This document shows positions 21,891 to 43,033 of a stretch of 64,000 nt of DNA, one piece after another; within the stretch, counting starts at the first letter, position 1, and each line of letters starts with the position of its first letter. Both the position numbers and the translations under genes were made by a program. Source of the DNA: Asterias rubens (lineage: Eukaryota); NCBI RefSeq assembly GCF_902459465.1, contig NC_047079.1, positions 10,292,001-10,356,000 of the forward strand. Direction: 5' to 3'. A model generated the notes under the pieces. The model worked only from the letters and a program-made list of their open reading frames with translations, searched no databases and was not told where the DNA came from.

Positions 21891-24800
21891 TTAAGTCAAA
21901 CTACCAGCTCTCTCAAAGCGCTGGTTAAACTTGAACATGTCACTCGTAGGCGACATGCGTAGATTGAAGTCCTTCATGGCCAAGGCCATCGACACTTGTG
22001 CGGACCTAACCTGCTTGACCCTTTTATAACAGCCAAGGCACAGATACAGCTTCCTGTTTTGCTTGTCAGGCGCCAACGCAATGTTAAACTCCTCCTGGAT
22101 GATGTTTGCCACGACCCATTGTTCGCTATTCTTACTGAAAAGCAGCCTCTTCTTGGGCGTGACGGTTACCAGCACGTTGCAGTTCACGCAATTCACACAG
22201 AAGAAATGCTCGATTGTGGAACACATCTTCTTTGTGTAGAGAAAGCCTTCGGGACTTGTGTAACTGCTGAATTTCGTCTTGGCCCGAAATAAAGCTTGAC
22301 GACTGCTACAAATTTTATGCATGACGTTTTCGCAGAACTTGCATAGGATGATGGGAGGTTTCCCGGCAGTCTGAGGCAGCGACAAGTCTATTGCATTCTC
22401 GATGACAGCGACAACATCAGACATCAAGACGCGGTTCCAGTCATCGGGCGGAATAGTTACATCGCAGTTGAGGCAGCTCACTTTCTTGTAGTTTTCAAGC
22501 GAATTGGCTTGCTGAAAAGGTAATGAAAATGAAAGTGTAATAATAACATGGTGTAAAAAAATAAAAACATCACACAATGTAAACTATCACTGAGTGATCT
22601 CTTTCAGTAAAGGCATGCAAAATAGGCTTTAATAGAAATAAACAGAAATCTTCCTTAGAAAAAGCAATTGCCTCCATGCCCCCTGCTCATTGCCTTGGTG
22701 CCCTTGAAATGCTCCAGTAGAAATTGACAATTTCCTCATAGGGTGCCTTTTACCAGAGAGAAAATGCCTTGGTGCCCTTGCCTTTTCAAAAACGAAGCAA
22801 ATACAGGCCCGGTTATTAAACCAAAGATGCCTCATAAGTGAACGTAATCACTGAAGCTTGCAAACCTGAGGAAAACTGTAAACAAGGGTGCTTGCTTACT
22901 TATTATGTGAAGAAGAAAAAAAACTAGGGTTGACCCCTACTCTTCCTGGATGGGTTCTTTTACATTTTGCTTTAGAACACTAGTGACTTGACTGGGACTC
23001 TATCACACACTGGGTTAATTTATTAGAAACACCAGATCTTGTGTCCAGTGCTCTTAACCGCTGAGCCACGACACACGTGCACAACCAGACAAAACTAATT
23101 TGTTTAGCAAGTTTTTTTTCTGATGAATAGCTTTGTGAAATTGTGGGGGTTTTCTCTTCAAGAAAACTGAAGAAAGCAAACATGTGAACACAGGTAAAGT
23201 TAAAAAACACTTCAAGTCCCGTATTGAGCTTCTTTAAAAAAAAAAAAATAAATACAAATTTAGAAAGTATTAGCTTACCCTCTTATCCAGAATAGTTTCT
23301 CTGTTAGGTGCCGGTATTAAGGCTGCATGGGGTGACAGTTGTTGAACTCTGTCTGTCCTCCGGGGGTCTAAGTCAGTTGGAGCTCTTCGGGGCAAGTTTG
23401 TGATGGTGTGTGGATCTTTGCGAGTAGGGTGGACTTGTCTGGCTTGATAAGGAGGAGGTCGACGGATACACTTTAGAATTTCATCCCGATCGACAGAAGT
23501 CCCAAACTTATCCGGGTGGTAATTGCTGCTGCTGTTAGATGCAGGATATTGCAACTCCTTGATGGGAGGTCTCAAGCTCGAATAGTAGGAAGGCGGAGGT
23601 AAAGTGGGCCTCTGTTGAGGATACACATTCGAAGGTACACTGAAGTTGTAAGGTGGCAAATGCATATCTGTGTAGCGTAAACTACCTGTGGAGATCAAAC
23701 GTTGAGTGTTTGTCATGACTTGTGGATTGCCTGGCTGGGATCCCACGGCTCTGTTGGCAAGATCGGGGAATACTGAAGACTCTCCTGGGATCTGGGGATA
23801 AGTAGACATGATAGGTGTATGTCTTGTCCAGGAAGGGTACTTCGGCAAAGTATAAGCAGAGTTATTTACTTGATGGCTTTGCCGGTCTGATAACGGACGA
23901 TAAGCTTCCGGAGGCTGACATTGTGAAATTGGCACCCTAGGAAAACTCATATTGGGATTGGAGGCGTTTAACCACGATGCACAGGCGGCATGGTAACTAG
24001 GTGGGCTAGAAACAGTATTTGAAAAACCGTCCCCGGGTTGTAGTTTGCTTCTCAAAACTGGCAAAGTGTCCTCCTGTTGGACAAATTGAGGTAAAATAGG
24101 TGGTGTTGCACCCTGTGGTTGTCCTTGCAATAGCGGTGGTGGCTTGGGCGAAGTCAACTTCTGCAGCAACACAGGGTGGCTTGGTGAACTGCCTGCTACT
24201 CTGCTATTCAGGCGGAACTGTTTTGGTGGTGGTTCTCCGAAGTTGTTGTTTTTATCAAGGAGTTTCCTTTTGTCTGTAAAGAAGGGATTAGACGCTGCCT
24301 TTGAGACGAACGTTTCAGAACAAGTCTGGTGGGATGGGGAGATTGAGGTAGTCAAAATAGCTTCTTGGGAGGACCAGGTAGGTTCTTGGGAGAACCTGGA
24401 ATGCTCTTGGGAGAACTTAGTATGGGGCAGTTCAGGTGTGAGGTAGCCAGCTCTTTGTGATACAGCAATCACCTCCTTGATTACAGCTTCGTTGGTGCAA
24501 GAGATCACATTCTTCTTAGGCAAACAAGTCTCTGGAGTTGGCAACTGGGGCATGGGAGGATAAGCTGTGAGAATTGGCATATCTACAGCTTGATTAGTGC
24601 AAGAGTTTATATTCTCCTCAGGCACACGAGTCTCTTGAGTCGGGGAAAGGGTCTTGGGATGAAAAGCTGTGAGAACTGGCAAAACTTCTTCGACTTCCTT
24701 CGAGATGCACTCCATCGTTTCCGGTGTTTGCCAATGCAATGACTTCTCCAGAGGTAGGGCGACCATAACCATTGTGGTTTGATCAGACTCTGGGTTTGAC

Positions 24801-26059
24801 TGCTTCGAGACCTCCCCATCAGGTGATTCCGAGGTTTCCACTGACACGGATTGAATACACTCTGCAGTGGTTTCTGTGGACTCTGTCATATCTTCCACAG
24901 ACATGGTGACAATCTCATTTGTCTGCCATACTGGGAATACCTCTTTAGAAGCTGAGGTAGTTGTCTCATTTTCAGACATAGATTGCTGAGCTGTTTGTTT
25001 GACAACCTGTATCAAAGGTGTGTCAACATCGCTATCAGTGGCAGAAACCTTGAGATGGTTCCCATCATAAGCTGTCATATCTCTTCGGACCTGTAACTCA
25101 TCAGGAAATGTTCGGGTCTGTGGTGCTGATGGGATGCCCTGCTGTGTTGTTTCATTCAGCAGATTCTTTAGTATTTTAGTCTTGATGACATCCTTAAACG
25201 ATTTTTCAAGGGAATCTTTTATCACATTTTGAACAGACATGTTGACAATATTCTGACGTGTATTGGGTGAAAGTGCTTCATCTTCAGTTAAGTTTGATGT
25301 CAGACCAAAAGTAAGTGATTCCTGGGTTGAATGATCTATTGTTGCACCTGTTTTCTTGGATGGTTGAGAGAGGTCCGAGGTAGCTCCATCAGACATTTCA
25401 TATGGAATCGTAGAGCAAGACATTTGCAGAGGTGCGTCATCATGACCCAGAATATGAGACTCTCTGACAACTTCTGCCCCAAGCGACTTTGCATCGGCCA
25501 CAATTTCTGAGGCTTGATAATAGAAAGCATCGTGAACGGGATCTCTTCCCTGCAACTCCCACGTCAGTGCTTCCTGAGTAAAGTCAGATGTACATCTAAG
25601 AATGCACGGTTGTAACTTCATGAAAAATGATGAATCAATGTTGTCCCCTGAAGAAACTGTTGAGTCATCAGTTATAGTGGCAGGAGTGGGATCGGCTCTA
25701 AAAAGACTGACAGGAACTGGAGTGACAGGAGCTTGGGTGACAGAAACTGCGGTGACAGAAACTGCGGTGACAGGAACTGGGGTGACAGGAACTGCAGTGA
25801 CAGGGACCGGGGTGACAAGAACTTGGGTGACAAGAACTTGGGTGACAGGAACTTGGGTGACAGGAACTTGGGTGCCAGGAACTGAGGTGACAGGAATATT
25901 TAGTGCAGTGTCCACCCAGTTGGCTTCGTTTAAAGCCATCATCTCTCTCACTGTCATACTTGTGCGTCTTTTTCGCAGTTGGATACTTCCGCCACTGTGC
26001 TGAAAACGTGCTCCTGCACTTGAGAACCTTGGAACCTTTTCATCCGGATGGCTTCTCAT
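21891..26059 (-). CDS. Large Pro/Ser/Thr-rich protein with two C-terminal ZAD (zf-AD)-like C4 zinc domains, about 1133 aa from M26059
   Basis: Open 2.8-kb exon (acceptor before 26084, donor AGG|gtaagc at 23279/23278) spliced in phase 0 to exon 22511-21891 (tttcag|CAA). Last exon has CLNC-x40-CKFC and CVNC-x46-CLGC with ZAD-like spacing. Start codon and upstream exons uncertain. Confidence 0.8.
22905..23075 (-). mobile_element. tRNA-derived SINE (relatives about 16302-16645 + and 13920-14118 -)
   Basis: Head GTGTCGTGGCTCAGCGGTTAAGAGCAC, body TGTAAAAGAACCC..GAAGAGTAGGGGTCAACCC. Confidence 0.7.
25707..25897 (-). repeat. Coding 15-bp minisatellite (about 13 units) encoding VT[QPA]V[PSL] pentapeptides
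   Basis: Plus-strand unit GGTGACAGGAACTTG repeated head-to-tail with substitutions, in frame in the large exon. Confidence 0.92.
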
Positions 26060-27158
26060 TTCAGCAAATAAATTGAGTTGACATCTGTTTTGAAGAAAAA
26101 AAAAAGAACAAAAGCTTAGGACACATGGTAACTGACCTTAAGTGGACATTTTATTGTCATCTTCTTGTATCCCTTTCCCAAAACTAGTTTAGCACTGAAC
26201 CTTGGGTAGCACCTTTTAGGGTCCTTTGAGTCGAAGCCTCATACAGAAAACTACAAAAATTGAGAAACTTGAGTGTGTTTTGGTTGATTGCGCACAACCA
26301 GTACATTTGAATTGTACTTCGAAAATCACCACAACAGAAACCTACTGGGCATCAAAAAATAATTAACTCAAAAAAAGTAATCATAAGGCTGAAAGGATTT
26401 AGGTACTTTTTGAAACACAAAGTCCACAGATTTACATTACACCACCCTTTGAATGTAATGAGTAGGAAGCAAACCCCTTAAAATATTACCTGCTCAGGTG
26501 CTGTAGTTTTTGTTTTACTAATTTTACGAAAACTACATCACCTCAGCAAGTAATATTTTAAGGGAAGCCTTCTACCTACCATCACTATCTTCACACTGTG
26601 CGACTTTAATCTAAATCTGTTGACATTGTGTTTTGTGTCCTTCAAAATGCACCTGGACCCTTTAAAGGGACTTTCAGAGTACTTAGTCAATTTTAAAATA
26701 GATTTACCAATACTCTATAGACGATGTTACCTACGTTCAAACCGCCCTCTGTTGACAAAACACTGTACAGGTCACGTTTTGCCGGGCAAAAAGATGCGCA
26801 GTCAGGGTAACATTGCATCTTTTTCTAGCTGGCTGCCAAAACACAAAGGTTTTGCCCGGCGGTATGCGCGCGAATCATGTTATGTTTTTCGAGTGACGTC
26901 AGAGGTCACATCGTCTATACACTGTGAAGAATAAAGTAATGCCTCAACCATACATTTTAGACCAAACGTCTCCAACAGTCATTTTCATTGGCTTAGACAT
27001 TTGAATGACTTTGTAGATTAGTCAGGAATGATCTTGGGTATTATTTCTTCTCTTCTTTTTGTTTACTAATTATAGGCCCTACACATGTATACTTATTTTA
27101 AAATATAAAGGTCAAATTTTGACAACAAGTTTTCACCAATTCACAATTTTTTATTTAA

Positions 27159-27531
27159 AGGCAGTGGACACTATTGGTAATTACTCGAAATAATAATTGG
27201 CATAAAACCTTTCTTGGTGACGAGTAATGGGGAGAGGTTGATGGTATAAAACATTGTGAGAAACGGCTCCCTCTGCCATAGTTTTCGAGAAAGAAGTAAT
27301 TTTCCACGAATTGGATTTTAAGACCTCAGATTTAGAACTTGAGGTCTCAAAATCAACCATCTTAACGCACACAACTTCGTGTGACAAGGGTTATTTTTCT
27401 TTCATTATTATCTTGCAACTTCGATGACTGATTGAGCTCATATTTTTACAGGTTTGATATTTTATGCATATGTTGAGATACACCAACTGTGAATGCCAGT
27501 CTTTGACAATTACCAATAGGGTCCACTGCCT
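27159..27531. mobile_element. Kolobok-type MITE, AGGCAGTGGACAC family
   Basis: TTAA|AGGCAGTGGACAC...GGGTCCACTGCCT|TTAA. TTAA target with purine-purine termini is the Kolobok pattern. Further copies 32449-32808, 33197-33582, 52979-53330; partial about 48565-48857 and 50090-50388. Confidence 0.85.
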
Positions 27532-29642
27532 TTAACATCAACTTTTTTGAAACCCCAAAAGGCACCCCATAGTAAAAAAAAAAAAACACCTTTTAGTGTC
27601 CTTTGATTTTCAACGTCTGGGTAATAAAAGAGATTGTAAAATATACCTTTGAAATAATTCTATAGCTTCACATTGTGTTGAGAAGGTGTGCTTCAAGGAT
27701 GAGTGGTCAAACTATCAATGTTTTCTAAGAAGAAAAGAAAGTGTGACCCCCCCCCACCAACCTTTAGGATTGGCATCTGTACCCATCCAGGTCTCGCTCT
27801 AATGCATTACAAACAAGAACTAATATTACTATTTTGGTAAATATTTTGAAATTGTGCTTTGTGTTACAAAAAGTAACTAAAAGTCTCATACACATGTACA
27901 GACCCACAAATCATTAGATGACACGTCAAAAAGAACAATAATCCAAAGGCAAAATTGTGGAAAGTGGGGGAAATCTTAGAAATGATGTCACAAGAGAAAT
28001 ATCATTTAAAGGGAAGGTACACGTTTGCTAATTACTCAAAACAAATATTAACTTATAAACTGACTTGGTAACGAGCATTGGAGAGCTGTTGATAGTATAA
28101 AACATTGTGGGAAATGACTCCCTCTGATTCTGAAGTAATGTAGTTTTCGAAAAAGAGGTAATTTCTGACTAAAATAATAAAAGACTTCTAGCTAGAAGTC
28201 TTTAATTCCTATCTGAAAGCACACAAATTCGCCCAACAAGGGTGTTTTTTCTTTCATCATTTTCTCGCAACTTCACTGACCGATTGAGCCCAAATTTTCA
28301 CATTTTTGTTATTTAATGCACATGATGGGATACACCAAGTGAGAAGACTAGTCTTTGACAATACCAAAGGTGTACCTTCCCTCTAACATGTAGTGACATC
28401 ATTTCCTAGAATAAGGTTATTTGGCAATGGTCAACAGGGGAGTTTCTGTTAACTCAGTCGAGGTCAGAGCCTAGGAATGTGTGCTGAGCAATGGGAGAGT
28501 ATGGCCACCTGTTGAGATGTAACTTGGGGGACCAGTGAATATCCTTTAAAAGTGAAATGGTTTCTCAATCAGTCTGCTGTTATTTATAATTCTACCTCTC
28601 ATGTTGCTATTAGTTTTAAGAGTGATTACCCCACATATACCCAATAACCCCTCTGGGCTTTCCCCTCTAGAGTCGTTTATAAAATAAAACAAAAACATTA
28701 CTACAACTTTTTCAGTCACTAGACAGCAGGTACGCCATGTCCTTAACAGTTGTATAGGAAGCAATACTAGTTGGGCAGAATTCTGACTTGTCCTGTCATT
28801 TGGTCAGCGGACCACTGATAAAAAAAGGGAGAAATTTTACCAGCTCTTTGCCCGGCCTGTACCTGGCTTTTGTCCATGGTCTGATATGGTCTGATACATG
28901 GTCATGGTCTGTCCCTACACAGTAGACAACTATGGATGAATTCAATCTGTGTAGAGTTATCCTTTTAATCTTTTAATTTAACTGATTTAACTTTTAATTT
29001 AAGGGATAGGGGGGCACAGAGGTGCTTAAAGACCTGCCAGACATACTGACACCACCTGATGCAATAAAAAGATGGCTGGAATGGTTCCACTTTATCAGAG
29101 GGGTAGATCTAAGATAGGTTTAAGATGCTAAGATTTTGTAATATGGGTGTTGTTGTGTTGCCCCAGCCCATCCCCCAAAACATGGGAACTGGCTCCCCTT
29201 CCTTTGATGTGGAACGGTCTAGTCTACAATACCATGGACAATAAACTTGTTCTGGGCAATGCAATTGGGAAAAACAATAAAATACATAAATATGTCTCCC
29301 AAAATGGATTTCAATTCTTTGAGCTTGGGAGTTTCAGTTTGGTTGGCTCAAGATAAACACCCAATGGCTCAACTCAGCATGGTCTAAAGGCTATCAGTTT
29401 CAAATCTCCAATTCACTGGCTACACAAGCCCCCCCCCCCCCATTGCAAGGTCACTGGTCCCAACCACCAGTAAAGGCTGAAGTGGAAGAAGAAGGAAATA
29501 TTCATGGTCTCTCTTGGGACCCTGAATAGTTATCAGCTTTAAAGGGAGTACTGTTGTTTTATGAACAGGGGTGACTTTGGATTTATTGTAACATAGAAAA
29601 ACAAATAACTATTTTATGTAGTTTTTTTTACATTATTAACAT

Positions 29643-29937
29643 TAAGCTTGGGCGATATCACGATATTATCGAATATCGCGATATTAATTTGGACACGATT
29701 TCGATATCGGATGGATTTGGTTTTAATCGAAATATCGATATATCGCGATATATCGCCAGAAGAATAGGTCATTAGAACACCTCTCTTATTATATACTAGG
29801 ACTGTCTCTTCTACAACTTTCACTTGGAGTTTTAAGACTGATGATGTCAAATTTCATTAATCGCGATTATATCGAATATCGCGATATATTGTCTGCGATA
29901 TATCGTGAATAAAATAAATCGATATCGCCCAAGCTTA
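29643..29937. mobile_element. hAT-type MITE with perfect 8-bp target-site duplication
   Basis: TIR TAAGCTTGGGCGATATC / GATATCGCCCAAGCTTA; TSD ATTAACAT at 29635-29642 and 29938-29945; many subterminal ATCG/CGAT repeats. Confidence 0.92.
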
Positions 29938-30970
29938 ATTAACATTTCTCAATTTATTTCTGTATGGGGTCATAAGGTCATGGGGGAGCCTTACAGTTTC
30001 TAGAAGTAGGGTGATGTATGCAAATTGACTATGATTCTCTTGTGTAATTCGTTGCCTAAATATAATTTTCCTGTTTTTTTTTTTATAAGGGTCCATTTAC
30101 AGCATCGTCAATCATGGTCAAACTTTTGTTGTTATATTTTAGGTAGTTTTCATAAAACATAGGAGAACACCCATTAATCATGTTGTAGACCAATAGAAAA
30201 AACATTAAAACTGTCATGGTTTTACAACATTCAATTCAATTCACTTTTATAATTAAATAATGACAACCTGTGTTTCTACCTCCATTGGCATTAAATACTC
30301 ATTCATTCATATCCAACCCTATATTTAGCATTTTTAGCTATAATAGTTACAATTTAAAAAAGGCATGTGATAATGTCAATAATTTTATTATGTTTTTAAA
30401 CCTATTTTCCACACAGACAATGCATTCGTTTTTACACTCAGTCTCGAGTGCTGAAAGAGCGCTAAATTAAAAAGGGGCTAAGTTGTTCAAGAAAACTTCC
30501 TCTCAAGAATTCCTGATTCCATGGAGGAAAGAAACGTCCTTCCTCCATACTGATTCCATGTTCTAAGCACCACTACGAGCGCCGTCAAAGTGGGTACACG
30601 AATCGTAGTGGTCGTCGGTGGCTTGCCCACTTTACCACCCGCACAGACCACGGTCACCGTACGAACCCTGGGACCATGGAAGGAGAGGGACCGAGTTTCA
30701 AAAGTCATCCTGTTTCGCTCCACTCTTTCGTCTTTGGGGTCCCAAATAACAACTATTTTTACTTGAATTGAACGCCACATAAACTTACCTAAATATCTCC
30801 CAGTTTACAAAAGCCAAATACTCACGAAATGTGTATTCTAACAGAAGTTTGTGCTTGGTATTTTAGCTACAGCAAACGTACACAACTGGCTAGTGGGTGC
30901 GCGCGCTCTTATCTTCGGCCTATGCCAAACTTTACCCACGTGTTGTAATTTAGTGACAGTTGTCAAAACA

Positions 30971-30984
30971 GCGCCCTCTCGTGG
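30971..30984 (-). promoter_or_regulatory. CTCF-like motif at the putative promoter of the double-ZAD gene
   Basis: CCACGAGAGGGCGC (1 mismatch); about 150-180 bp upstream of minus-strand donors gtgagt (about 30824) and gtaagt (30788); CpG-rich context. Confidence 0.5.
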
Positions 30985-33113: not shown

Positions 33114-36100
33114 TCAGGAATGCTGTTGAAGATAAAACAAGAATATTGACAAGTTGATTTTGATGCGAGTTTAAAACAATGTGCAATAGATGTTAAAGGC
33201 ACTGGACACTATTGGTAATTACTCAAAATAACTGTTAGCATAACACCTTACTTGGTAACGAGCAATGGAGAGATGTTGATAGTGTAAAACATTGTGAGAA
33301 ACTACTCCCTCTGAAGATAATATGGAGTTTTTTGAGAAAGAAGTAATTTCTCACTCAAATATTTAAATTGATTTCGAGACCTCACCCGAGGTCTCAAAAT
33401 CAAACATCTGAAAGCATGCAACTTCGTATGACAGGGATGTTTTTTCTCCATTATTCTCTCGCAACTTCGACGACCAATTGAGTTAAAGTTTTCACAGGTT
33501 TGTTATTTTGTGCATAATAACGTTGAGATACACTAAGTGAGAAGACTCATCTTTGACAATTTCAAAAAGGTGTCCAGTGCCTTTAATTTTGCATTGAGAT
33601 TAAAGAATATTATTTGGTTTTCCCAGGGATGTGTATTGAGAGAGTTGCAACACAGAGGAACCAGTCGTCTTTGGTCACATGGTTGCTTGACGCCATTTGC
33701 TTGATGCAGCACAAAGTAATTGAACTGATCACAAAAAAGACAGCTTATAAGAAGTTGATGTTAATTCAAAAGTGGCGCGCTTGCATAAAATGCTGATTGT
33801 CACATGCGTTGCTTCCATTTTCCATTCGCGCTTAAGAAACTCATAATAGCTGCCTATCCCTATGGGGTCCAACCTCGTTCCCCCTTGGCTTTATTTCAAA
33901 TGATAATAATAATAATAATAATATCGAAGTCTTAATAGCGCACGTATCTACCAAACAAGGTACTCAAGGCGCTGAGTATATACAAACATTCAGAAAGATA
34001 GGTTATTGCAGTGATGAATTCTGAGACCCAATAATTTAGCACCCTATAAGGGTTTACAAGGTGCTACGGCGCATTAAGCAGCCACAACCAGGAACACCGG
34101 GGCGAACCCCTTCTTTTTTCGACAAGTGCACTGGGTTATTTTACATGCGTTACACAACACATGGGACCAACGGCTTTACGTCCCATCCCATACTAGTTCT
34201 AAGGGGAGTGACTCACCACACATTTTGGGCAGACCATTTCCTTGTCTTCTAGTAATGCAGGCGTCACCACCTCAGGAGGAAGGCAGTTGATGTGGTACCA
34301 CGACTGACACTGTCCATCACAACCTATCCAGTCCTCACCATCTTCCCAATATTCTTCCTCACAAACTGGGCAGTAAACCTCATCCTTCGAGTGCTTGCTG
34401 CTTCTTTTCCTTCGTCGTGGTGACTGCTTCCTCCCTCGTCTCCTAGAACTCTTCCCAGATTTGGAAAACTTCCAGGTGCTTTTCGATTCTGTGTGGTAAG
34501 CTTCCTTATAGAGTTTCTTCCAAACTGAAAACAATGGTGTCTCCTCAAGATCCAGCCCGCTTTCAATACAAGTTCTGTAAGTTTCTCTTGTTGTTTTGTC
34601 GAGTTTATCATCCAGTTTCTTGAAGACAATTTCAGCTACATTTGAAGATGTTGCAGAAGTGGAGAGGTGTTTTTCCTGGTCATCATCTCCCTGAACGGGT
34701 TCTTTATACTTTGGTGGGTTTCTTTCCGGAGAGTTTAGGATTTTATCTGGCAGATGAGCATCATCGACCATCTCTCGATCGAGAGGATAAACTCCTGACT
34801 GAATGAAGCAACTACGGATGGCCTCTGAGTTGTCAGCCTCTTTCCATGCAGAGCTGATTACATGAGCTACATTGTCAGTTCTTACGGGTAACCACTGGTT
34901 TTGCGTTGTCCATTTTGTGAGCCATGCCATTCTGAAGGGGCCATCCTCTCCAATGTCAAGGGGTTGAACTAGTGACATCGCTTTGGTTGGTACTCGAAAC
35001 AAGTACACATCATTTTTACGCGCTGTGACGTATGCCTCATAAGGTATGGAATTGTGTTGGCAACTCAGAAGAAGAACAACAGGGCGTGCATTTCCGAGAT
35101 TCTTAACGAAGTGCCACTCTAACCACGAGCTGAATGCATCTTGCTTCTTTCCATCTCTCTCAAGAATGATCACTCCCGATCCCTTGGATGCCCCATCAAG
35201 GGGATCCCACTGGTTGGTCTTGTGACACATTCCCCGATAGCGATAAATAATGAAGGGTGGAAGAAGATGCCCGTCTGCACTCGCACACATCCCGACTGTT
35301 GCTCTTCTGCGTCCGACAGCAAGGCACACAAACGGCTCTGCAAACACCACAATTTTGCTTGTTTTCTTGTCAATCTCAAATGTGGTTTCCGCATAATTGA
35401 AAATTTGGCTAGGTTTATCTACTATGTCAAGTTTTATGAGGAGGGATTTCAGTTCTCTGAACCACTCATCTAAACCTCTCTTTGTAGGAGCAGCATCGCA
35501 AAGCAGAGCTAAGTTGGAGGTTTTCATTTCTTTCAATTTAGGGTGACGCCGTAAGAAACTATAATACCAGCGGTAAGATGGTCTGCCATTTATAAAAGGG
35601 CTATTGTCTCGCTTGAAGAAGCTCTGCACTGCATCTCGAAGCAAAACTGCAGGGACCTGGAAACCTCCCTCGGACATGGTTAAGACCCAGTTAGCAAGGT
35701 CTTGCTCTTCCTCTTCTGTCAAGACTGGGGCTGGTCCATGTTGAGTAGTCATGGGAACCTCTGCTTTGGAACGGCGATACAGCTTACCAGCATGGACTCT
35801 CCAATAGGCTGCAGCGGCTGTCACCGTCTTAAACTTCCCCGACTGGAATTCTTCAAGTCCACACTTGATTCTTTGTGCCTCTGGAATGTCAGCAACACTA
35901 GGTGCAGAAGTGGGATTATCCAAACCCTTACGAAGGTACAAATTGGCTTTTCGAGTTTTCTCCTTCTTTAGTTTCGCTTTCGCTGACTGGCGCATCTTCC
36001 TTGTGACTTTTTCCTTAACAACCGGCAAGGGGGTTGTCTTGGTCCTTTTACTTTTCCTTTTTGATACATTTTCTGCTCTGATTTGCTTTGTCCGTGATTT

Positions 36101-37151
36101 TACCCTCTTATCTCCTCTGTGTTTGGCTGGTCTTGATTTTGTTGAAAACTGCTTGGAATCTTCTTGATTCTCTGGTGTTGGACTTGGGCTTGAATCGGAT
36201 GTCGTTTCAATATCTAGAAGTAGTAGGTGAAAATCGCCAAGTGAGATTTAGTATGCATAAAAATGTATAAAAAAATAAAAAAAATACATAACAAATAGGC
36301 TTAATATCTTATGAAACCACAGATACCTCATCTGTGAACTTAATCACTGTGGCTCGCAAGCCTGATGAAACCTGTATACATGTGTGCATGTGAACCAAAA
36401 ACACCAGTAAACATGGTTAACTTAACCCCGTTCTTCCGCAATGTTCTGGGTTCTTGATCCACTCTCCAAACTAAGGCAATGGTATATTAAGTCACAAGTG
36501 CCAACTCTGGGGAAAATTGAGGCAACAAATTTGAGTGTCAATCATCACACCCTGTGATCACTGATGTACGTGTATCTACCTACCTAGGGTATGATTGACA
36601 TTTGACAAATCAAACTAATTATAGTAAATAGTGTTAAATAAAACCAGCACCCTTCATCCAATCAATACAAATAATTGAGGAGGGGTTTACATGTTTAAGG
36701 TATGGGATTAAGTATTGATTGATTGAATTTATTCGGATAAAAATACAGCAAGAACATGCCAAAAGTATATACACAACAACAGAAGAAACCAATGAAGAAT
36801 AATAAGATTTTAAGATAAACCGAAGTAAAAAGAACACAAGATAGTACAGTAGAATTTGAAATACGTACTAGTTTACTACACAAAATTATCCAAGGATAAC
36901 GTAACCCATTGAAATCCACTTGAAATCTTACCAATTATTGATGCGGCCGCCGTTTCTTCAATGATGATTATCTCATTTGTACCATCACCATCACCAGTGG
37001 GCCTTTCCTCATGGTGATGATGATGAGGCACCGTGATGTCCTCTTCGATTTCGACGACTTCGAATTCGACTTGGGACTCCGGAACGATTTCTTCTCTTTC
37101 ACCTATTTTGACAACTAGGCCTGGCTCAAAAATCTCAAAAACCTCAGACAT
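33114..37151 (-). CDS. Domesticated pogo/Fot-like transposase-derived protein A (acidic/His N-terminus, psq-like HTH, CENP-B/Tc5 HTH, degenerate DDE_1, PHD), about 741 aa
   Basis: Exons 36932-37151 (ATG; donor G|gtaaga), 34217-36213 (cttctag|AT; donor GTG|gtgagt), probable last exon 33114-33122 (ttcttgttttatcttcaacag|CAT TCC TGA). Motifs FNYAETTF, LLLSCQHNS, QPLD, GVYPLD; C4HC3 PHD CPVC..CDGQC..H..C..CPKC. Last micro-exon less certain; unspliced stop at 34199. Confidence 0.88.
33197..33582. mobile_element. Kolobok-type MITE in the probable last intron of transposase-derived gene A
   Basis: TTAA|AGGCACTGGACAC...GTGTCCAGTGCCT|TTAA. Confidence 0.85.
33903..34188 (-). mobile_element. 5'-truncated SINE (Deu-domain-like) with L2-type 3' end and (TAT)n tail
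   Basis: Minus strand GGATGGGACGTAAAGCCG..AAGAAGGGGTTCGCCCCGGTGTTCCTGG..CAGCGCCTTGAGTACC..GTGCGCTATTAAG then (TAT)n. Deu assignment needs a Dfam check. Confidence 0.72.
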
Positions 37152-38002
37152 GTTTATAGATAATAGTCACGCATGCCTAATAAATACAAAGAAGGTTTGT
37201 TTACTCTTAGAAAAGACGCAAAAACAACTGCACAGTTGACAGTGCTTGGTTTGTTTACTGCATAATACAGGCCAAAAACTGGTGTGTGGTACCCCGTGTT
37301 GCCCGAACCTTTCACTTGCGAAATCGATTCACAACTATGGGACCAGTCTGTCAAAGCATAAAGAGCGCCACCTGTTAAATTCAATTTTTTTTTTGCTAGG
37401 GTGTGGGCGTGGTAAGGGATGGGGAGGTCTCCAAAAGTTTGCTGCCCCTTTAAATCGTATTCAAAGAACTAAATTAGTATTTGTTCCTCTATCATTTGGT
37501 CAAGCTTAACCACTTTATTTGTTTATTAGTAATTGCATTGACTTTTATTTATTTACTTTATTTGTTTAATTTGTCATTTTCTAGAAGGGGGGGGGGGGGT
37601 ATGTTACAAATCAACAAAATATATAATTACTTTCCCCCATCTAACCTTAGTCTATTACTTCACATAACCTGTTGATGCACGTATACTCACAAGTTGAACT
37701 TTTAAATGAAACTACCACAGGTTCAAAAATCTTAGTCAATTCATACATTCTTACTTTCCAAGATCACTCCTGCCCCAACATCAGCCCAAGTGGTAAATAC
37801 AACTTTTTTTAACTGGATCTACTAATATAGATAAATCTCTAGGGAGACCACCAACACATGCTAGATAGCCTAGTGTGTACACCACCAGCACATCAATATG
37901 GAGGTTGCAGGTTCAAGTCCATCTAGAACCAATTTTTCATTGTTCAACCCCAATATTACCCAGTCAATTTCCCTTATGGGTTATCATTTGATTTACCTTT
38001 AA

Positions 38003-38358
38003 AGGAACACGTTGCCAAGGACCGGTCAAGATGGTCTTTGAAAAGTGTTTGCAACCGTTTGTTATAAAATGCATATGGGTAGAAAGATGTTGTAAAAGTA
38101 GAATACAATGATCCACACAAACTGCCTCAAAATTGCACGGTTTTCCTTTTACCTCATCGACTAACACGGCGGCCATTTATGGGAGTCGAATTTTGACTCC
38201 CATAAATGGCCGACCGTGTTAGTTTACAAAGTAAAAGGAAAACCACGCAATGTCGAGGCAAATTTGTGTGGATCATTGTATTCTAGTTTTAAAACATCTT
38301 TCTAACCATATGCATTTTATAAAAAACCAACTCGTCCAATCCAAGGCAGCGTGTCCCT
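38003..38358. mobile_element. Kolobok-type MITE (AGGAACACGTTGCC termini) with internal palindrome
   Basis: TTAA|AGGAACACGTTGCC...GGCAGCGTGTCCCT|TTAA; 18-bp internal inverted arms CGGCCATTTATGGGAGTC near 38170-38212. Confidence 0.82.
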
Positions 38359-39153
38359 TTAATCATTTCAATTGGTGACTTTTGGGAACACAAGGTGGCA
38401 GCAGACTTACCAGGTAAATCCGTTTTTCTCAGGAATATGCGCATGCTTAGAACTATACAAACAATAGACTTGGTAAGTCTGCTGCCACCTAGCAATCCAA
38501 AGTCTCGGACCAAACTTCAGAACCCAACAAGCAGAAAAGGAGACCATACAAATTATTATTTTTTATTTTGTGAAACTTTTATTTAAAGAGGTATTTTTTT
38601 ACATTATCACAAAAACACCTATGTACAACTCACAATTCCGTCTTTGTTGAAAGGTGTAGACATATGTATGTATTTCTGTCAAGAATTGTTTGTTTTGTCT
38701 CATTGATAAAGAAAGCTACACAAATTCCCAAGTTGTTGAAATAAAAATCTCTCTCATATTTAAGGACTCTATCGGTTAGAAAATGAGTGCATCATGAAAC
38801 CTTGGAGCCCCTCTTTAATAATATTTTCACTATAACAAACGGTTTCATGGACAAACTCGACCCATCCAAGGCAACATGTCCCTTTAAATTGGATTCGAAA
38901 CCAGGGACCAAAGAGGTGACACCAATCACAAAGTGTCATGTGGCAAGGCAGTTTGGCTGGTAAACTCATTCTGGTAATCATAACATTGCTGTGCTTAGCT
39001 ACTTTGTGTGCTTAAGCAGCTTAAGTAGTTAAGAACAACAAAATTGTGCTTACCACTAGCCAAACTACCATGTCTGTGTGTCCTATTTGTTAAGCAGTAT
39101 TTTCTGTTTAAGCAGCTCTATGAGACTGTGCCCTATATACAGCAAGGCAATAG

Positions 39154-41914
39154 TTAATGCTGAATCGAATCCACAGAAGGTTTTCTTGATTTCTGGAAGA
39201 AAATGAAAAAGAGAGAAGGGGGAAAATAAATAAATGACACAAGAAAAAAATACTGAACTTAAAGCCATTGGACCCTTTCGGAACAGAAAAAATAATAAAA
39301 GTTCACATGATTTACAAATAACTTACAGGGTTTACAGAAGGTAATGGTGAAAGACTTCCCTTGAAATATTATTCCATGAAATGCTTCACTTTTTGAGAAA
39401 ACATTAAAACAATATCAATTCTCGACATCGAGATTTATTTTAAACACATGTCATGACACGGCGAAACGTGCGTAAACAAGGGTGGGTTTTCCCGCTAGTT
39501 TCTCCCAACTCCGATGACTGATTGAGACTAAATTTTCACAGGTTTGTTATTTTATATATAAGTTGTGAGTGATACACGAAGTGTGGGCCTTGAACAATAC
39601 TGTTTACCAAAAGTGTCTAATGGCTTTAAATTAGCGTCCAACTATTTATCTATGATGTCACTTTGTTTATATTGACTTTGAAAAGTTTTTCGCGCTTAAA
39701 ACAAAATAAATAAACGTGCCACTTTAAAGCTTGGCACCCCTGAACAAAGATATTGACAAAGTAAGGAAACCGCCAGCATGAGCTAGTTAGCTCAGTTGGA
39801 AGAGTGCCGGCACGTTAATCTGGAGGTTTATGTTTCAAGACCCACTCTCGTAAATTGTTCTTTGTTCAACCCCCAAAAACCTTTAAACTTACAGTACACT
39901 GTGGGCAGAACATTTCCTTGTCCTCCAGCAAGACCGGCGTGACAAGCTCCGGAGGAAGACAGTTGACGTGAAACCACTGCTGGCATTCACCGTCACACCC
40001 AATCCACTCTTCTTCATCTCCACCAAACTTCTCGCTGCAGACTGGACAGATCGTCTTATCGTCACTAGCGGCGGCCTCAAGGCTCGGTTCCTCCGCGTCC
40101 TGAGTGGTCAACTTTTCCTGGTCTGTGGTTGTCACAACGACTTCTACAGACGTCATGGGAACGTTGGGGTCATTCTTGAAGGCTTCGAGGTAGAGTTTCC
40201 TCCAGACTGGAAAGAGGGGTGAGTCTGCGATGTCGAGATTATTCTCGATGCATGTGCGATAGAGTTCTCGTTTCGATTTATCTAATGTATCGTCGAGTTT
40301 CTGGAAGAGGAGCAACGCAGCGATTGGTTGATCACTCTCGGGAATGTCCACCTCAGACTCAGAGTCATCATTTAAAGCTTGGTCGTTGTCAAAGTCGACT
40401 TGGGACTGGTCGACGGTGGAGAGGAATTTCAGTGTCCCGGATGGGAGATGTTCATCGTCAACCATTTCACGATCTAAGGGATACACACCCGCCTGTAAGA
40501 AACAGCCTCGGATGAGTTCTCCTTGCTCCGCTTCCTGCCAAGCATCCCCGACCACACTTCCAACATTCCTGACGTTCACAGACACATGTCTGTTGCTCTT
40601 CACCCATTTCATTAGCCAGTTAGATTTGAAAGGTCCGTCTTCCCCTATATTGACCGGTTGGACAAGAGCGGCAGCTTTAGGCGGGACTCTGAAGAAGTGA
40701 ATGTTGTGTTCCGAGGCGATGGCATAGGCCCCGTAGGTGATGTCGCTCTCGTTTAAATCAACAAGCAAAACAACTGGAACATTCTCTTCCACCTTGTGAA
40801 CAAAGAAGTTGTTGATCCAGTACCCAAAGATGTCTCGGTTGGGATGGGATCTTTCTAGGAGTAATTCTTCTGCACCTTTTGGAGCACCGTTAAGGAAATC
40901 AAACTCCTTGTGAGAATTCTTCAAACCTTTGCAGATGATGAACGGCGGGAGGAGGTCGCCTCCTGCATTTGCGCAGATGCAAATTTTGATTTCTCTACGG
41001 TGATGCTCATCATCTTGAGCTTTTCCTTTCGGCTTTAAGACATTCATGACGATTCTCTCTGTCCTCTTGTTCATCTCAAATCCAGTTTCTCCGTAACTCC
41101 AGATTTGCCGGGGTTTATCAGCAACACACAAATCCGTTAGAAAACACTGAAGCTCATTAAACCATTCATCAAGCACAGAATTTGTCAGCTCTGCTCGACA
41201 AATCGATGTCATCTTGGACATTTTCAGTCCCTTCATAAGTTTGGGATGGCGTCGAACGAACTTATGATACCAAGTATGGGACGGTCTGTCGTTTGTAAAT
41301 GGGTTACCGTCTTTCTTGAAGAATGTCTTAACGGCATCACACACCATTCCAGGTGCAACTGGGAAGCCTCTTTTCCCCATCGTTACCACCCAATTGACCA
41401 GGTCCTCCTCATCTTGTTCAAGTAAAACTTTGCGGGGTCCGCGCTTGGCATCAAGGGGTACCTCCCCGTTGTGACGTCGATAAAGTTTTGCTGCGTGAAC
41501 TCTCCAATATGCCGCTGCTTTCGAGACAAACTTAAACTTCCCTAGGGCGAGGTCTTTCATTGCGCCTTTGATTCGGTCATTCTCAGTCATTTTTGCAATG
41601 GCCGGGGAGGACGTTGGATGATCAAGTCCGACTCGTTTATAATCCGTGCTTTTGTACTTCTTACGCTTCTGACCTCTCCCCTTCTTATGAATGACTTCCT
41701 TAGATATCTTGATCTTGATTTGTTGATCTGCCTCTCGTTTAAACCTTCTGCCTTCATTAGTTGCTGCTTTACTTGATGTTGTTGTTGACTTGGTCTTTCT
41801 TTTATCACGTGCTTTGACGACTCTACCCTTCTGGGTGGGTTGCTTTTGCTTCGTTTTCAGACGTGAAGACTTGAGACTGGCTTTTCTTTGATTACTTTGT
41901 GCTTTTCTTGCCAT
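39154..41914 (-). CDS. Domesticated pogo/Fot-like transposase-derived protein B (basic N-terminus, psq-like HTH, CENP-B/Tc5 HTH, degenerate DDE_1, PHD), about 686 aa
   Basis: Coding exons 39893-41914 (acceptor before 41920; donor ACT|gtaagt) and 39154-39192 (long pyrimidine tract then AAATCAAGA, KSRKPSVDSIQH*). Likely non-coding exon ending at 42646 (AG|gtacg). Collinear with protein A from the HTH through the PHD. Confidence 0.88.
39263..39625. mobile_element. Kolobok-type MITE, AGCCATTGGAC family, in the last intron of gene B
   Basis: TTAA|AGCCATTGGAC...GTCTAATGGCT|TTAA; inverted second copy at 48940-49300. Confidence 0.85.
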
Positions 41915-43033
41915 CTTGATCTGAAAATTGGATTGAGATTTTTGTAAGATTTAATTTACATGTATTTAGACTAATTTGAATATTTACAGTAATTATGATT
42001 ACGCCCCAGCAGTCACCGACAGTGACACTGCACACTGGGTCTGTGTCTAGTTAATTAACTCATGTTTTATGTGCGGACGATAGGGCCTATGCTAACGCTA
42101 TGCACAGAATTAATTTGACATTCACTGTTCCATTCAGGCTACAGAATGACAGAGCAATGTGTACATAATTTATTGTCAGTTTGCTGTGTGTGATTTACAC
42201 GGATAACTTTCCGTATGTGCCACCACTTTTTCACTCATTTAAAAAAAATCGAAAAAGGGATATCTCTTTTCTCATCAAGATTCAAACAAACTACAAAAAA
42301 GGAAGGTTAAATTAGATTCAATCAGATACTATTTATAAATATATAAATATTTCATTCATATTGAATGAAAAAGTGGTGGCGCCATACGGAAACTTTTCAA
42401 ATTGCACTGCTATCTAGCCCAGTGCACGGTGGCACTGACTGACGGCCTACCACTACAAGCAGAACAGAGGGCTACACAGTCAACAGTCATGACAGTACAT
42501 TGCTCATTCCATTGCCGACCTATCTAACTAAAACTCAACATGCTTCACCAGTTTCGTGAAAAAAATACAGCCCCCAAAAAAGAATGGGACAGTAACAAAT
42601 ACCATGCAATTACACTAATAATTCATAACGAAATAAGAAACGTACCTCTTGATAACAGATTATCGTCAAAACATTTTACAATTCATCGTCGAAACGTTTC
42701 TTTCAACTAAAAATACGGACGTAGTACTAGTAGATCGACGACGAACTTCGACTGCCGTGAATATTTTTACCTCAGCTCGGCACTGAACACCGCCCTCTCG
42801 CGTCTGGCATTATTATTTTTCTTTTCTAATACCGTACCAAAGATTGAAGTGACACCACAGCCAGCAAGTCGATAAAAGAAGGGCAATTAAACCCGGGGAG
42901 GAAGTTCTGGTGTTTTCTTTTCTGACTCCCACAAACAAAAACCTACATGCATAGATGATGTTGGGGGGGGGGGGGGCTTCTCCTCCCCTAGTAAAACCCA
43001 ACCTTTGCGCGCCACTCTTGCCTCTAAGTCGGA

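What the first reader, a model, noticed from the sequence alone, without database searches (positions are those of the whole stretch)
21891..42803. Candidate three-gene chromatin module: double-ZAD scaffold plus two dead transposase-PHD readers
Three consecutive co-oriented genes in about 21 kb all encode predicted nuclear proteins with dimerisation (ZAD, dead DDE), DNA-binding (psq/CENP-B HTH) and histone-reading (PHD) parts, flanked by unrelated housekeeping and GPCR genes. Both HTHs share a changed recognition-helix segment (YWRVHA[GA]KLYRR), hinting at a common DNA target. A functional link is inference from clustering only.
Basis: inference. Interest (0 to 1): 0.7.

Follow-up and report, generated by a model that had tools for sequence, protein, structure and literature searches.

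The report
Starfish dead-transposase pair beside ZAD-like gene
Two neighbouring starfish genes are ancient, catalytically dead "jumping-gene" enzymes that kept their DNA-binding and histone-reading parts, and they sit beside a fast-evolving gene with two ZAD-like zinc modules; all three are real and have stayed adjacent across starfish orders, but nothing shows that they work together.

Summary
The sequence observation holds. On the minus strand of Asterias rubens chr C19 lie three consecutive genes.

- **Gene 1:** annotated "mucin-17-like", 1133 aa. It has a disordered 927-aa exon and a 206-aa exon with two homologous 4-Cys modules.
- **Paralogues A and B:** 44% identical, each psq-like HTH + Tc5 HTH + DDE_1 + C-terminal PHD.

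A and B are domesticated pogo transposases:
- only two copies in the genome, with no TIRs;
- orthologous pairs in Patiria and Acanthaster;
- dN/dS about 0.1;
- spliced transcripts;
- a broken DDD triad in every orthologue (D1 lost in both, D2 only in A, D3 only in B).

The PHD is not a host fusion, because intact multi-copy pogo relatives carry a homologous C-terminal PHD. It most resembles H3K4me3 readers, and both cage tryptophans are kept.

Gene 1's modules are invisible to Pfam zf-AD, but the model folds like ZAD in four structure libraries (Z 4–5.4, TM up to 0.69).

The order B→A→gene 1 is conserved in three species. So is the unrelated MFS neighbour in Acanthaster. Gene 1 evolves 4–6 times faster, and it is nearly absent from RNA assemblies that hold A and B. 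The "module" therefore remains unsupported. An earlier scan note covered the A/B pair on this same DNA.

The parts
23279..26059 (-). Gene 1 (annotated 'mucin-17-like', P0013): large first coding exon of 927 aa. It is low-complexity/disordered and has no Pfam domain.
   Evidence: The ORF is. A GTAAGC donor follows 23279. The spliced model equals the annotated 1133-aa protein. There are no Pfam hits. BLAST finds no similarity to the Acanthaster orthologue's big exon. dN/dS is 0.49 for Acanthaster-Patiria.
22227..22511 (-). Gene 1, ZAD-like module 1 (CxxC...CxxC followed by a long helix).
   Evidence: The acceptor AG lies at 22513-22512. The four Cys are invariant. The AF2 model has pLDDT 65. ZAD structures are the top hits.
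21894..22226 (-). Gene 1, ZAD-like module 2, with the stop codon at 21891-21893.
   Evidence: hhalign of module 1 against module 2 gives probability 93%, E 3.5e-7, over 89 columns. The Cys are invariant.
34217..36214 (-). Paralogue A (LOC117302190, P0001): main exon encoding a basic N-terminus, psq-like HTH, Tc5 HTH, dead DDE_1 core and PHD.
   Evidence: Pfam is. An RNA contig covers up to 36214. The acceptor lies before the codons for DIE, and a GTGAGT donor follows CPKC-V.
36949..37268 (-). Paralogue A: 5' exon encoding an acidic, His-rich N-terminus (Met at 37151). B lacks this exon.
   Evidence: In run X2 one RNA contig carries this exon together with the main exon. Runs X1 and X5 cover the exon on separate contigs. 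An acidic N-terminus is also present in the Patiria and Acanthaster A orthologues.
35771..35806 (-). A: HTH1 motif YWRVHAGKLYRR (helix2-turn-helix3 of the psq-type HTH).
35531..35719 (-). A: HTH_Tnp_Tc5 (the second HTH).
   Evidence: Pfam E 1.4e-6, 28.6 bits against a cut-off of 22.2.
34805..35308 (-). A: DDE_1 core. D1 is Ala (within 35378-35398, just upstream of the Pfam envelope), D2 is Ser (within 35063-35080), and D3 is kept (within 34949-34966).
   Evidence: Pfam E 4.4e-9. Alignment with intact pogo transposases is, and coordinates.
34220..34372 (-). A: C-terminal PHD finger (C4HC3) with both cage Trp present.
   Evidence: Pfam 29.2 bits against a cut-off of 24. The best PDB sequence matches are KDM5B PHD3, BPTF and KDM5A PHD3.
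39893..41914 (-). Paralogue B (LOC117302191, P0006): main exon with the same architecture as A but no acidic exon.
   Evidence: Pfam is. The RNA splice junction at 39893 is seen in four runs. A GTAAGT donor follows CPQC-T.
38809..39192 (-). B: 3' terminal exon, reached across a 700-nt intron that begins right after the PHD.
   Evidence: Contigs in runs X1, X2, X5 and X6 join 39893 to 39192. The acceptor is TTCCAG followed by AAATCAAG.
41474..41509 (-). B: HTH1 motif YWRVHAAKLYRR.
40586..40993 (-). B: DDE_1 core. D1 is Gly (within 41078-41098), D2 is kept (within 40757-40774; Glu in Patiria), and D3 is Asn (within 40643-40660).
39896..40048 (-). B: C-terminal PHD finger.
   Evidence: Pfam 30.1 bits against a cut-off of 24.

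Best explanation
**A and B.** They are an old tandem pair of domesticated pogo-superfamily transposase genes, found so far only in starfish.
- The ancestral transposase already had two N-terminal HTHs, a DDE_1 core and a C-terminal PHD finger.
- After immobilisation, the copy lost catalysis and duplicated before the Forcipulatida-Valvatida split.
- Both copies have since been kept under strong purifying selection as expressed, spliced host genes.
- Most likely mechanism (inferred): they are sequence-specific DNA-binding chromatin factors. The PHD docks on the H3 tail, probably H3K4me3. The dead RNase-H-like core serves only as a scaffold or oligomerisation surface, as in CENP-B, POGZ, POGK and the TIGD proteins.

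**Gene 1.** It is a separate, rapidly evolving, largely disordered protein. Its only constrained part is a C-terminal tandem of two ZAD-like treble-clef zinc modules. These most likely act as a pairing or dimerisation unit (inferred from the fold).

**The trio.** The adjacency is conserved synteny, dating from where the ancestral element landed. It is not a demonstrated functional module.
For: **Shown: domestication of A and B.**
- Pfam finds Tc5 HTH, DDE_1 and PHD in both.
- The genome holds only two copies; the next DDE_1 hits are 25-27% identical.
- No flanking TIRs are present.
- Annotated orthologues of both A and B exist in Patiria miniata and Acanthaster planci, in the same order and orientation.
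- In the tree, A and B form a clade at 100/100 support. Each subclade mirrors the species tree.
- NG86 dN/dS is 0.09-0.22 for A and 0.08-0.11 for B.
- Spliced RNA contigs cover B in four runs. A is covered in three, and one contig (X2) joins its two exons.
- The DDD triad is incomplete in all seven orthologues aligned to intact pogo transposases.

**Shown: the PHD is ancestral.**
- P0058 has an intact DDD, belongs to a 13-member cluster, and has a Pfam PHD at its C-terminus (E 4.7e-5).
- P0011 belongs to a 25-member cluster, has a PHD at E 8e-4, and lies between 26-nt TIRs with TA ends.
- Both carry an aligned C-terminal PHD, and P0058's clade is among the nearest relatives of A/B.

**Shown: PHD type.** The closest solved PHDs are H3K4me3 readers (KDM5B PHD3 at 7.8e-7, then BPTF, KDM5A PHD3, KDM7, ALFIN, DIDO). 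The two Trp that alone form the KDM5A PHD3 cage (PMC9814790) align with the two Trp of A and B.

**Shown: gene 1.**
- The two modules are homologous to each other.
- All 8 Cys are invariant in three genera.
- ZAD domains take ranks 1-6 in the VIA re-alignment (Z 4.1-5.4).
- ZAD domains take ranks 1, 2, 3, 5, 9 and 11 of 48,161 chains.
- Foldseek's top PDB hit is the M1BP ZAD (probability 0.97).
- AFDB and Atlas hits are dominated by zf-AD proteins (TM up to 0.69).
- Orthologues P0016 and P0017 lie directly downstream of A in Acanthaster and Patiria.
Against: - No binding of DNA, histone or protein was tested. All functional steps are inferred from homology.
- Pfam HTH_psq does not recognise the first HTH of A or B, so its DNA-binding competence is unproven.
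- The ZAD-like model is of only moderate confidence (pLDDT 65, from 8 stacked sequences). Z-scores of 4-5.4 are in the range the tool warns can reflect a common arrangement.
- No sequence method links gene 1 to zf-AD. hhalign against a starfish zf-AD-like ORF aligns in register but at only 6% probability.
- Absence outside Asteroidea rests on word-seeded searches.
- Conserved adjacency and orientation over a long time is at least compatible with co-regulation.
Confidence: 0.7

Rival explanations
1. The three genes form a functional chromatin module: gene 1's double ZAD acts as a dimerising scaffold that brings together the two DNA-binding PHD readers. On this reading the cluster is maintained by selection for co-regulation.
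For: - The order B→A→gene 1 and the common orientation are conserved in Asterias, Acanthaster and Patiria.
- All three genes appear restricted to starfish.
- The upstream neighbour of B has changed (FMO in the two valvatidans, GPCRs in Asterias), while the trio stayed intact.
Against: - The unrelated MFS gene next to gene 1 is equally conserved in Acanthaster.
- Evolutionary rates are very different: dN 0.48-0.64 for gene 1 against about 0.1 for A and B.
- RNA assemblies that hold spliced A and B hold at most 4% of gene 1's sampled words; only X4 holds 17%.
- No interaction evidence of any kind exists.
Confidence: 0.08
2. A and B are specifically transposon-control factors. They bind relics or live copies of related pogo elements through the retained HTHs and recruit or read chromatin there, as S. 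pombe CENP-B homologues do at Tf2 elements. The rapidly evolving gene 1 would be an unrelated arms-race gene.
For: - The HTH1 segment is nearly invariant, and the Tc5 HTH is retained under strong constraint.
- The A. rubens genome holds intact multi-copy pogo families, with a 725-aa ORF at four or more loci.
- Pogo domesticates acting at repeats are known (PMC4231638, PMC5391189).
Against: - Those resident pogo families are only about 26% identical to A and B.
- Domestication predates the split of two starfish orders, so cognate TIRs have probably decayed.
- No binding sites were sought or found.
Confidence: 0.2
3. The C-terminal modules of gene 1 are not ZAD homologues. They would be a generic or convergent treble-clef zinc ribbon followed by a helix, with another role such as nucleic-acid or lipid binding.
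For: - No sequence method detects zf-AD.
- Z-scores are modest, and FYVE, eS26 and RING folds follow at Z 3-4.
- The domain is C-terminal and has no C2H2 array, unlike every characterised ZAD protein (PMC7913770).
Against: - Every solved ZAD entry ranks above almost all other folds in an exhaustive search.
- Alignments cover 68-82 of about 90 residues, including both CxxC pairs and the long helix.
- Bona fide ZADs share less than 18% identity with each other, and only the four Cys are conserved (PMC7913770). Sequence silence is therefore expected.
Confidence: 0.25
4. A and B are still mobile, or are recently decayed transposon copies and not host genes.
For: Both have a full-length transposase-like architecture within a single large exon.
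Against: - No TIRs.
- Only two copies in the genome.
- Syntenic orthologues in three species.
- Catalytic triad broken in all orthologues.
- dN/dS about 0.1.
- Host-type introns and spliced mRNAs.
Confidence: 0.01

Closest known systems
Vertebrate domesticated pogo transposases (POGK, POGZ, CENP-B, TIGD2-7, JRK/JRKL; Gao et al. 2020, PMC7386202; Mateo & Gonzalez 2014, PMC4231638)
   Same: - Derived from a whole pogo transposase, with HTH_Tnp_Tc5 and DDE_1 retained.
- Stationary single-locus genes with Ka/Ks about 0.06-0.1.
- Catalytic triad partly or fully lost.
- An extra chromatin- or DNA-related domain is present in some members (KRAB in POGK, ZNF in POGZ).
- A case of co-domesticated paralogues is known (JRKL and TIGD2).
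   Different: - This is an independent event, seen only in starfish.
- The accessory domain is a C-terminal PHD inherited from the transposon lineage, not captured from the host. That survey does not mention a PHD in pogo.
- The two paralogues lost complementary catalytic residues.
Arthropod ZAD (zf-AD, PF07776) of ZAD-C2H2 proteins, and the vertebrate ZNF276 ZAD-like domain (Bonchuk et al. 2021, PMC7913770; PMC12649048)
   Same: - About 90 residues with four invariant Cys as CxxC...CxxC.
- An N-terminal zinc knuckle and a long C-terminal amphipathic helix that starts at the second CxxC.
- Best structural matches in four libraries.
- Rapid sequence evolution, as reported for ZAD-ZNF genes (PMC7655104).
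   Different: - Not detected by the Pfam model or by any sequence search.
- Located at the C-terminus, not the N-terminus.
- Present as a tandem pair within one chain.
- No C2H2 fingers; it is attached to a disordered region of about 930 aa.
- Found in an echinoderm.
H3K4me3-reading PHD fingers (KDM5A/B PHD3, BPTF, KDM7, ALFIN, DIDO)
   Same: - C4HC3 ligand pattern.
- DW[IV]xCDGxCxxW[YF]H core, with both Trp aligned to the two-Trp cage of KDM5A PHD3 (PMC9814790).
   Different: - Attached to a dead transposase.
- Histone binding has not been tested.
- The loop between His-Cys and the last CxxC is family-specific (LPPE[VL]VTP..LEDKEM).

Membership tests
Domesticated (stationary) pogo/DDE_1 transposase gene | Transposase-derived domains (HTH_Tnp_Tc5 + DDE_1) over the Pfam cut-offs | tested here: met
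   In A, DDE_1 scores 36.6 bits and Tc5 28.6 bits. In B they score 34.4 and 29.0 bits. The cut-offs are 22 and 22.2.
Domesticated (stationary) pogo/DDE_1 transposase gene | No TIRs or TSD, low copy number, and orthologues at a syntenic locus in several species | tested here: met
   No flanking inverted repeats. Two copies in the genome. Same order and orientation in Acanthaster and Patiria.
Domesticated (stationary) pogo/DDE_1 transposase gene | Purifying selection and expression as a host gene | tested here: met
   dN/dS 0.08-0.22. Spliced RNA contigs.
Autonomous pogo transposon | Intact DDD (DD35D-type) catalytic triad | tested here: not met
   D1 is Ala in A and Gly in B. D2 is Ser in A. 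D3 is Asn in B. This holds in all seven orthologues, while ten other pogo transposases (nine keeping all three Asp) are the reference.
PHD finger (PF00628), H3K4me3-reader class | C4HC3 zinc ligands and a Pfam score over the cut-off | tested here: met
   29.2 and 30.1 bits against a cut-off of 24. The ligand pattern is visible.
PHD finger (PF00628), H3K4me3-reader class | Aromatic cage residues for trimethyl-lysine | tested here: met
   Both Trp align with the only two Trp of KDM5A/B PHD3, which alone form its cage (PMC9814790).
PHD finger (PF00628), H3K4me3-reader class | Binding of the H3K4me3 peptide | not testable with these tools
   Needs peptide pull-down, ITC or NMR.
ZAD / zf-AD (PF07776) | Match to the family's sequence model | tested here: not met
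   - No zf-AD hit even at E 10, for any of four orthologues.
- phmmer against 1.84 billion representatives finds only three starfish relatives.
- The profile against PDB sequences finds no ZAD.
- hhalign against a starfish zf-AD-like ORF is in register, but at 6% probability.
ZAD / zf-AD (PF07776) | Four invariant zinc-coordinating Cys, with the second pair at the start of a long helix (treble-clef subgroup) | tested here: met
   The Cys are invariant in all eight module copies. The model has helix 58-85 beginning at Cys57/Cys60.
ZAD / zf-AD (PF07776) | ZAD three-dimensional fold | tested here: met
   The model has moderate confidence (pLDDT 65).
- ZADs rank 1-6 in the VIA re-alignment (Z 4.1-5.4, rmsd 2.7-4.5 A, 68-78 residues aligned).
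- ZADs are top in the exhaustive search.
- The Atlas zf-AD cluster gives TM 0.69.
ZAD / zf-AD (PF07776) | N-terminal position ahead of a C2H2 zinc-finger array | tested here: not met
   The modules are the last 206 residues of the protein, and no C2H2 or any other Pfam domain is present.
ZAD / zf-AD (PF07776) | Homodimerisation through the long helix | not tested
   The complex-prediction job (module 1 against module 2, with Zn) could not be run. The machine was unreachable in seven attempts.
psq / CENP-B-type N-terminal HTH | Match to HTH_psq (PF05225) or CENP-B_N (PF04218) | tested here: not met
   No hit at E 0.1 or below in A or B. The segment does align positionally with the HTH_psq-positive region of P0009, P0011, P0012 and P0058.

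The most novel reading that the evidence does not exclude
The trio is a starfish-specific chromatin or genome-defence unit. In it a rapidly evolving tandem-ZAD scaffold (gene 1) pairs with two slowly evolving, DNA-binding, H3K4me3-reading dead transposases, possibly as an A/B heterodimer. That would be an echinoderm analogue of insect ZAD-ZNF or vertebrate KRAB-ZFP/POGK systems, assembled from a single transposon landing site.
Probability: 0.07. Interest if true: 0.7.

Novelty: new variant of a known kind. Interest (0 to 1): 0.4.

Why it matters
- **Independent domestication.** This is a non-vertebrate case of pogo transposase domestication that predates the split of two starfish orders. The chromatin-reader domain (PHD) was inherited from the transposon and not captured from the host. 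PHD-bearing pogo elements may therefore use histone marks for targeting, and hosts can co-opt the whole DNA-binding plus reader package.
- **Triad decay.** The complementary decay of the catalytic triad in the two paralogues is a clean natural record of loss of catalysis after duplication.
- **ZAD range.** The tandem ZAD-like module in a zinc-finger-less, disordered echinoderm protein widens the known range and architecture of a fold regarded as essentially arthropod-specific.
- **Scope.** None of this changes a major paradigm. The proposed three-gene "module" is not supported.

Tried and rejected
**Attempts that gave nothing usable**
- Single-sequence AF2 of the 206-aa C-terminus gave pLDDT 29. 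It was replaced by a stacked 8-copy alignment.
- Pfam at E up to 10 on four orthologues of the gene 1 C-terminus found no zf-AD.
- phmmer and profile searches against PDB sequences gave only noise such as eS26 and MYST zinc fingers.
- The HTH+DDE core of A has no PDB sequence match at E 1 or below. One earlier query had a frame slip.
- BLAST of gene 1's big exon against the Acanthaster orthologue's big exon found no significant similarity. Orthology rests on the C-terminal exon, gene structure and position.
- The Atlas feature search gave only leads below 0.9: zf-AD clusters at ranks 9 and 40, and RAG1_imp_bd at rank 2.
- The TIR search around A and B found only local MITE-like repeats.
- The TIR search at the P0058 locus found none flanking the ORF.
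- No DNA was available for P0005.
- Literature searches found no prior description of these genes or of PHD-bearing pogo elements.

**Complex prediction (module 1 against module 2, with Zn)**
The tool was unreachable in seven attempts, so there is no verdict.

**Readings rejected**
- A composite A/B active site built from the complementary residues is rejected, because D1 is missing in both.
- An active transposon or a pseudogene is rejected (see Rival explanations).

Full report
**What is there.** The window is Asterias rubens, G000 contig C19:10292001-10356000. Three consecutive genes lie on the minus strand between 21.9 and 42 kb.

Gene 1 has a 927-codon exon (26059..23279) ending at a GTAAGC donor. 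A 206-codon terminal exon (22511..21894) follows a TTTTCAG acceptor. The spliced product is identical to the annotated 1133-aa protein P0013, "mucin-17-like".

Paralogue A (LOC117302190, P0001, 741 aa) has its main exon at 34217-36214 and an acidic 5' exon at 36949-37268. Paralogue B (LOC117302191, P0006, 686 aa) has its main exon at 39893-41914 and a 3' exon at 38809-39192.

- two rhodopsin-type GPCR genes upstream (46045-47181 and 54308-55498);
- a gene at about 10.9-16.3 kb that matches the Acanthaster MFS_1 gene, though its ORFs gave no Pfam hit here;
- a pseudouridine synthase exon at about 3 kb.

**A and B are domesticated pogo transposases.** Both score above Pfam's curated cut-offs for HTH_Tnp_Tc5, DDE_1 and PHD. 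They are 44% identical end to end.
- A six-frame search of the 417.6-Mb genome finds only these two copies. The next hits are 25-27% identical members of ordinary pogo families.
- No terminal inverted repeats flank either gene.
- Database searches with A alone and with an 8-sequence A+B profile recover orthologues of each paralogue in Patiria miniata and Acanthaster planci, plus two unnamed assemblies. Scores then fall from above 1000 bits to 240 bits or less for generic pogo transposases.
- In both valvatidan genomes the order is FMO-like gene, then B, then A, all on one strand.
- A maximum-likelihood tree puts A and B in one clade (100/100). Each subclade repeats the species relationships, so the duplication predates the Forcipulatida-Valvatida split.
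- Nei-Gojobori dN/dS over the roughly 565-595 aligned core codons is 0.09 (A, Acanthaster-Patiria). It is 0.22 for A (Asterias against a close relative) and 0.08-0.11 for B. Deeper pairs are saturated at synonymous sites.
- In four probable RNA runs, one contig joins 39893 to 39192, which is a 700-nt intron beginning one codon after the PHD. In run X2 one contig carries A's main exon and its acidic exon. The splice consensus sequences agree.

**The transposase is dead, in complementary ways.** The comparison set was ten other pogo transposases: P0009-P0012, P0057-P0060, and two resident A. rubens families. Nine keep all three Asp; one resident family has Asp-Asp in place of Asp-Glu at the D1 motif. 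Aligned against them, the three catalytic positions read as follows.

| Position | Paralogue A | Paralogue B |
|---|---|---|
| D1 | Ala in all four A sequences | Gly in all four B sequences |
| D2 | Ser | Asp (Glu in Patiria) |
| D3 | Asp kept | Asn |

D1 is missing in both, so a composite A/B active site is not an option.

**The PHD came with the transposon.**
- P0058 has an intact triad, belongs to a 13-member cluster at 90% identity or more, and has a Pfam PHD at residues 728-780 (E 4.7e-5).
- P0011 belongs to a 25-member cluster and has a PHD at E 8e-4. Its ORF lies between 26-nt inverted repeats that begin and end with TA.
- Both carry a C-terminal PHD that aligns with that of A and B. 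They also share the preceding E-G-Y-D...W..L motif.
- The P0009/P0057/P0058 clade and P0010 are the nearest relatives of A/B (support 93/93).
- No TIRs were found at the P0058 locus.

The published pogo survey lists KRAB and ZNF as added domains of domesticates and does not mention a PHD (PMC7386202).

**PHD type.** The closest solved PHDs by sequence are H3K4me3 readers: KDM5B PHD3 (7.8e-7), BPTF, KDM5A PHD3, KDM7, ALFIN-like and DIDO. The two tryptophans that alone make up the KDM5A PHD3 cage (PMC9814790) align with the two tryptophans of the starfish motif DWIGCDG.CQ.W[YF]H. Binding itself is inferred.

**The shared HTH motif.** YWRVHA[GA]KLYRR is real (35771-35806 in A, 41474-41509 in B). 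It is conserved in all orthologues, with R/Q as the only change. It occupies the helix2-turn-helix3 stretch that is HTH_psq-positive in the intact relatives. There the consensus is roughly [VI]P..TL..R. Pfam no longer recognises this HTH in A or B. Identity between the paralogues is what common descent plus purifying selection predicts. A common DNA target is plausible but untested.

**Gene 1.** The 927-aa exon has no domain and no detectable similarity to its Acanthaster counterpart.

The C-terminal exon contains two modules that are homologous to each other (hhalign probability 93%, E 3.5e-7). phmmer against 1.84 billion representatives finds only three relatives:
- a fragment whose cluster includes the Asterias amurensis protein;
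- the 1273-aa Acanthaster protein;
- a 1420-aa Patiria protein.

All eight cysteines are invariant. These orthologues have the same two-exon structure. They lie directly downstream of A on the same strand.

No sequence method detects zf-AD. An AF2 model built from the eight stacked module copies (pLDDT 65, core 70-81) shows:
- a zinc knuckle;
- a short helix;
- a long helix starting at the second CxxC.

Structure searches with this model give:

| Search | Result |
|---|---|
| Foldseek, PDB | Top hit is the M1BP ZAD (probability 0.97, TM 0.54/0.58) |
| VIA re-alignment of Foldseek's hits | Six ZAD entries at ranks 1-6 (Z 4.1-5.4) |
| VIA exhaustive, 48,161 chains | ZADs at ranks 1, 2, 3, 5, 9 and 11 |
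| AFDB clusters | Mostly ZAD proteins (TM 0.55-0.67) |
| ESM Atlas fold search | Top is a zf-AD cluster (TM 0.69) |

ZADs share little beyond the four cysteines (PMC7913770). I therefore read the modules as ZAD-like in fold. Family membership is unproven, and the architecture is atypical: C-terminal, tandem, and without C2H2 fingers.

The exon evolves fast. Acanthaster and Patiria share 41% identity there, with dN/dS 0.40. The big exon gives dN/dS 0.49. The domain is single-copy in the genome. A few borderline canonical zf-AD matches exist elsewhere in the genome.

**Is it a module?** The microsynteny test passes within starfish, but it is not specific.
- The MFS gene beyond gene 1 is conserved in Acanthaster as well.
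- The only visible breakpoint is upstream of B: FMO in the valvatidans, GPCRs in Asterias.
- Gene 1's dN is 4-6 times that of A and B.
- Runs that contain spliced A and B (X2, X5) hold 3-4% of gene 1's sampled words. X1 and X6 are not listed as holders, and only X4 holds 17%. This is weak evidence, because assembled contigs drop rare transcripts, but it points away from co-expression.
- The controlled complex prediction for module pairing could not be run, because the tool was unreachable.

I therefore treat the cluster as inherited position. The ancestral element landed next to gene 1, or gene 1 arose beside it, and the block has not been broken.

**Verdict.**
- The domain-level interpretation is largely right.
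- "PHD fusion" is corrected to "PHD inherited from the transposon".
- "ZAD" is qualified to "ZAD-like fold".
- The functional three-gene module is unsupported (about 7%).
- Earlier scan notes on this same stretch (s1-175467, -175504, -175531, -175543, -175601) agree with what I tested.

Noticed in passing
L003, L005, L006, L007 (G000 C8:19.26 Mb, C6:16.24 Mb, C5:12.29 Mb, C1:27.36 Mb): This is a multi-copy pogo family with a 725-aa open frame whose printed first 30 and last 25 residues are identical at four or more loci. It has an intact DDD and HTH_psq + DDE_1, so it was probably active recently. Its C-terminus is not a PHD. It contains a GEYVAAIYEEDLYIGVV-type stretch that may be a Tudor- or chromo-like barrel.
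   Followed up: partly
window 38001-38600 and 39201-39800: MITE-like inverted repeats lie between A and B, for example 65-nt arms at 38057-38121 and 38263-38327 that are 94% complementary. They have enormous summed depth in RNA contigs (10^4-10^5), so this is a highly repeated element present in many transcripts.
   Followed up: no
L022 and L023 (G000 C15:12738767 and C15:12805312): Two copies, about 66 kb apart, of a 302-aa ORF (307-aa open frame). It has a RING finger plus sub-threshold zf-AD (24 bits) and RAG1_imp_bd matches, so it looks like the N-terminal exon of RAG1-like genes. The Atlas feature search for gene 1's domain also ranked a RAG1_imp_bd cluster second.
   Followed up: partly
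L020 and L021 (G000 C38:38105-38290, C83:22816-23001): A zf-AD match with identical scores (28.2 bits in the genome search, cut-off 28) lies within a 167-aa open frame on each of two small unplaced contigs. This suggests canonical ZAD-like sequences exist at low number in a starfish. Only the C38 ORF (L020) was read. It aligns in register with gene 1's module profile, but at only 6% hhalign probability.
   Followed up: partly
L013:1-1661, L014:702-5852 versus window 42800-64000: A synteny breakpoint lies immediately upstream of paralogue B. An FMO-like gene sits there in Acanthaster and Patiria, and two GPCR paralogues in Asterias. No FMO match occurs anywhere in the window.
   Followed up: partly
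P0008 (Acanthaster LOC110979164 isoform X2) versus L013:5378-7639: The annotated isoform X2 of Acanthaster B ends in an alternative C-terminus without the PHD, although the genomic exon encodes an intact PHD. A PHD-less splice isoform is therefore possible.
   Followed up: no
window 56466-57248: A reverse-transcriptase fragment (RVT_1, E 5.6e-7) on the plus strand. It is probably a decayed non-LTR retroelement.
   Followed up: no
window 35001-36214 (RNA contigs of runs X2 and X5): Contigs labelled "organism B" differ from the window at 28-29 of 1214 positions (about 2.3%) across A's main exon. This is either a sister species or a divergent population. Either way it gives a further orthologue with an open frame.
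   Followed up: no
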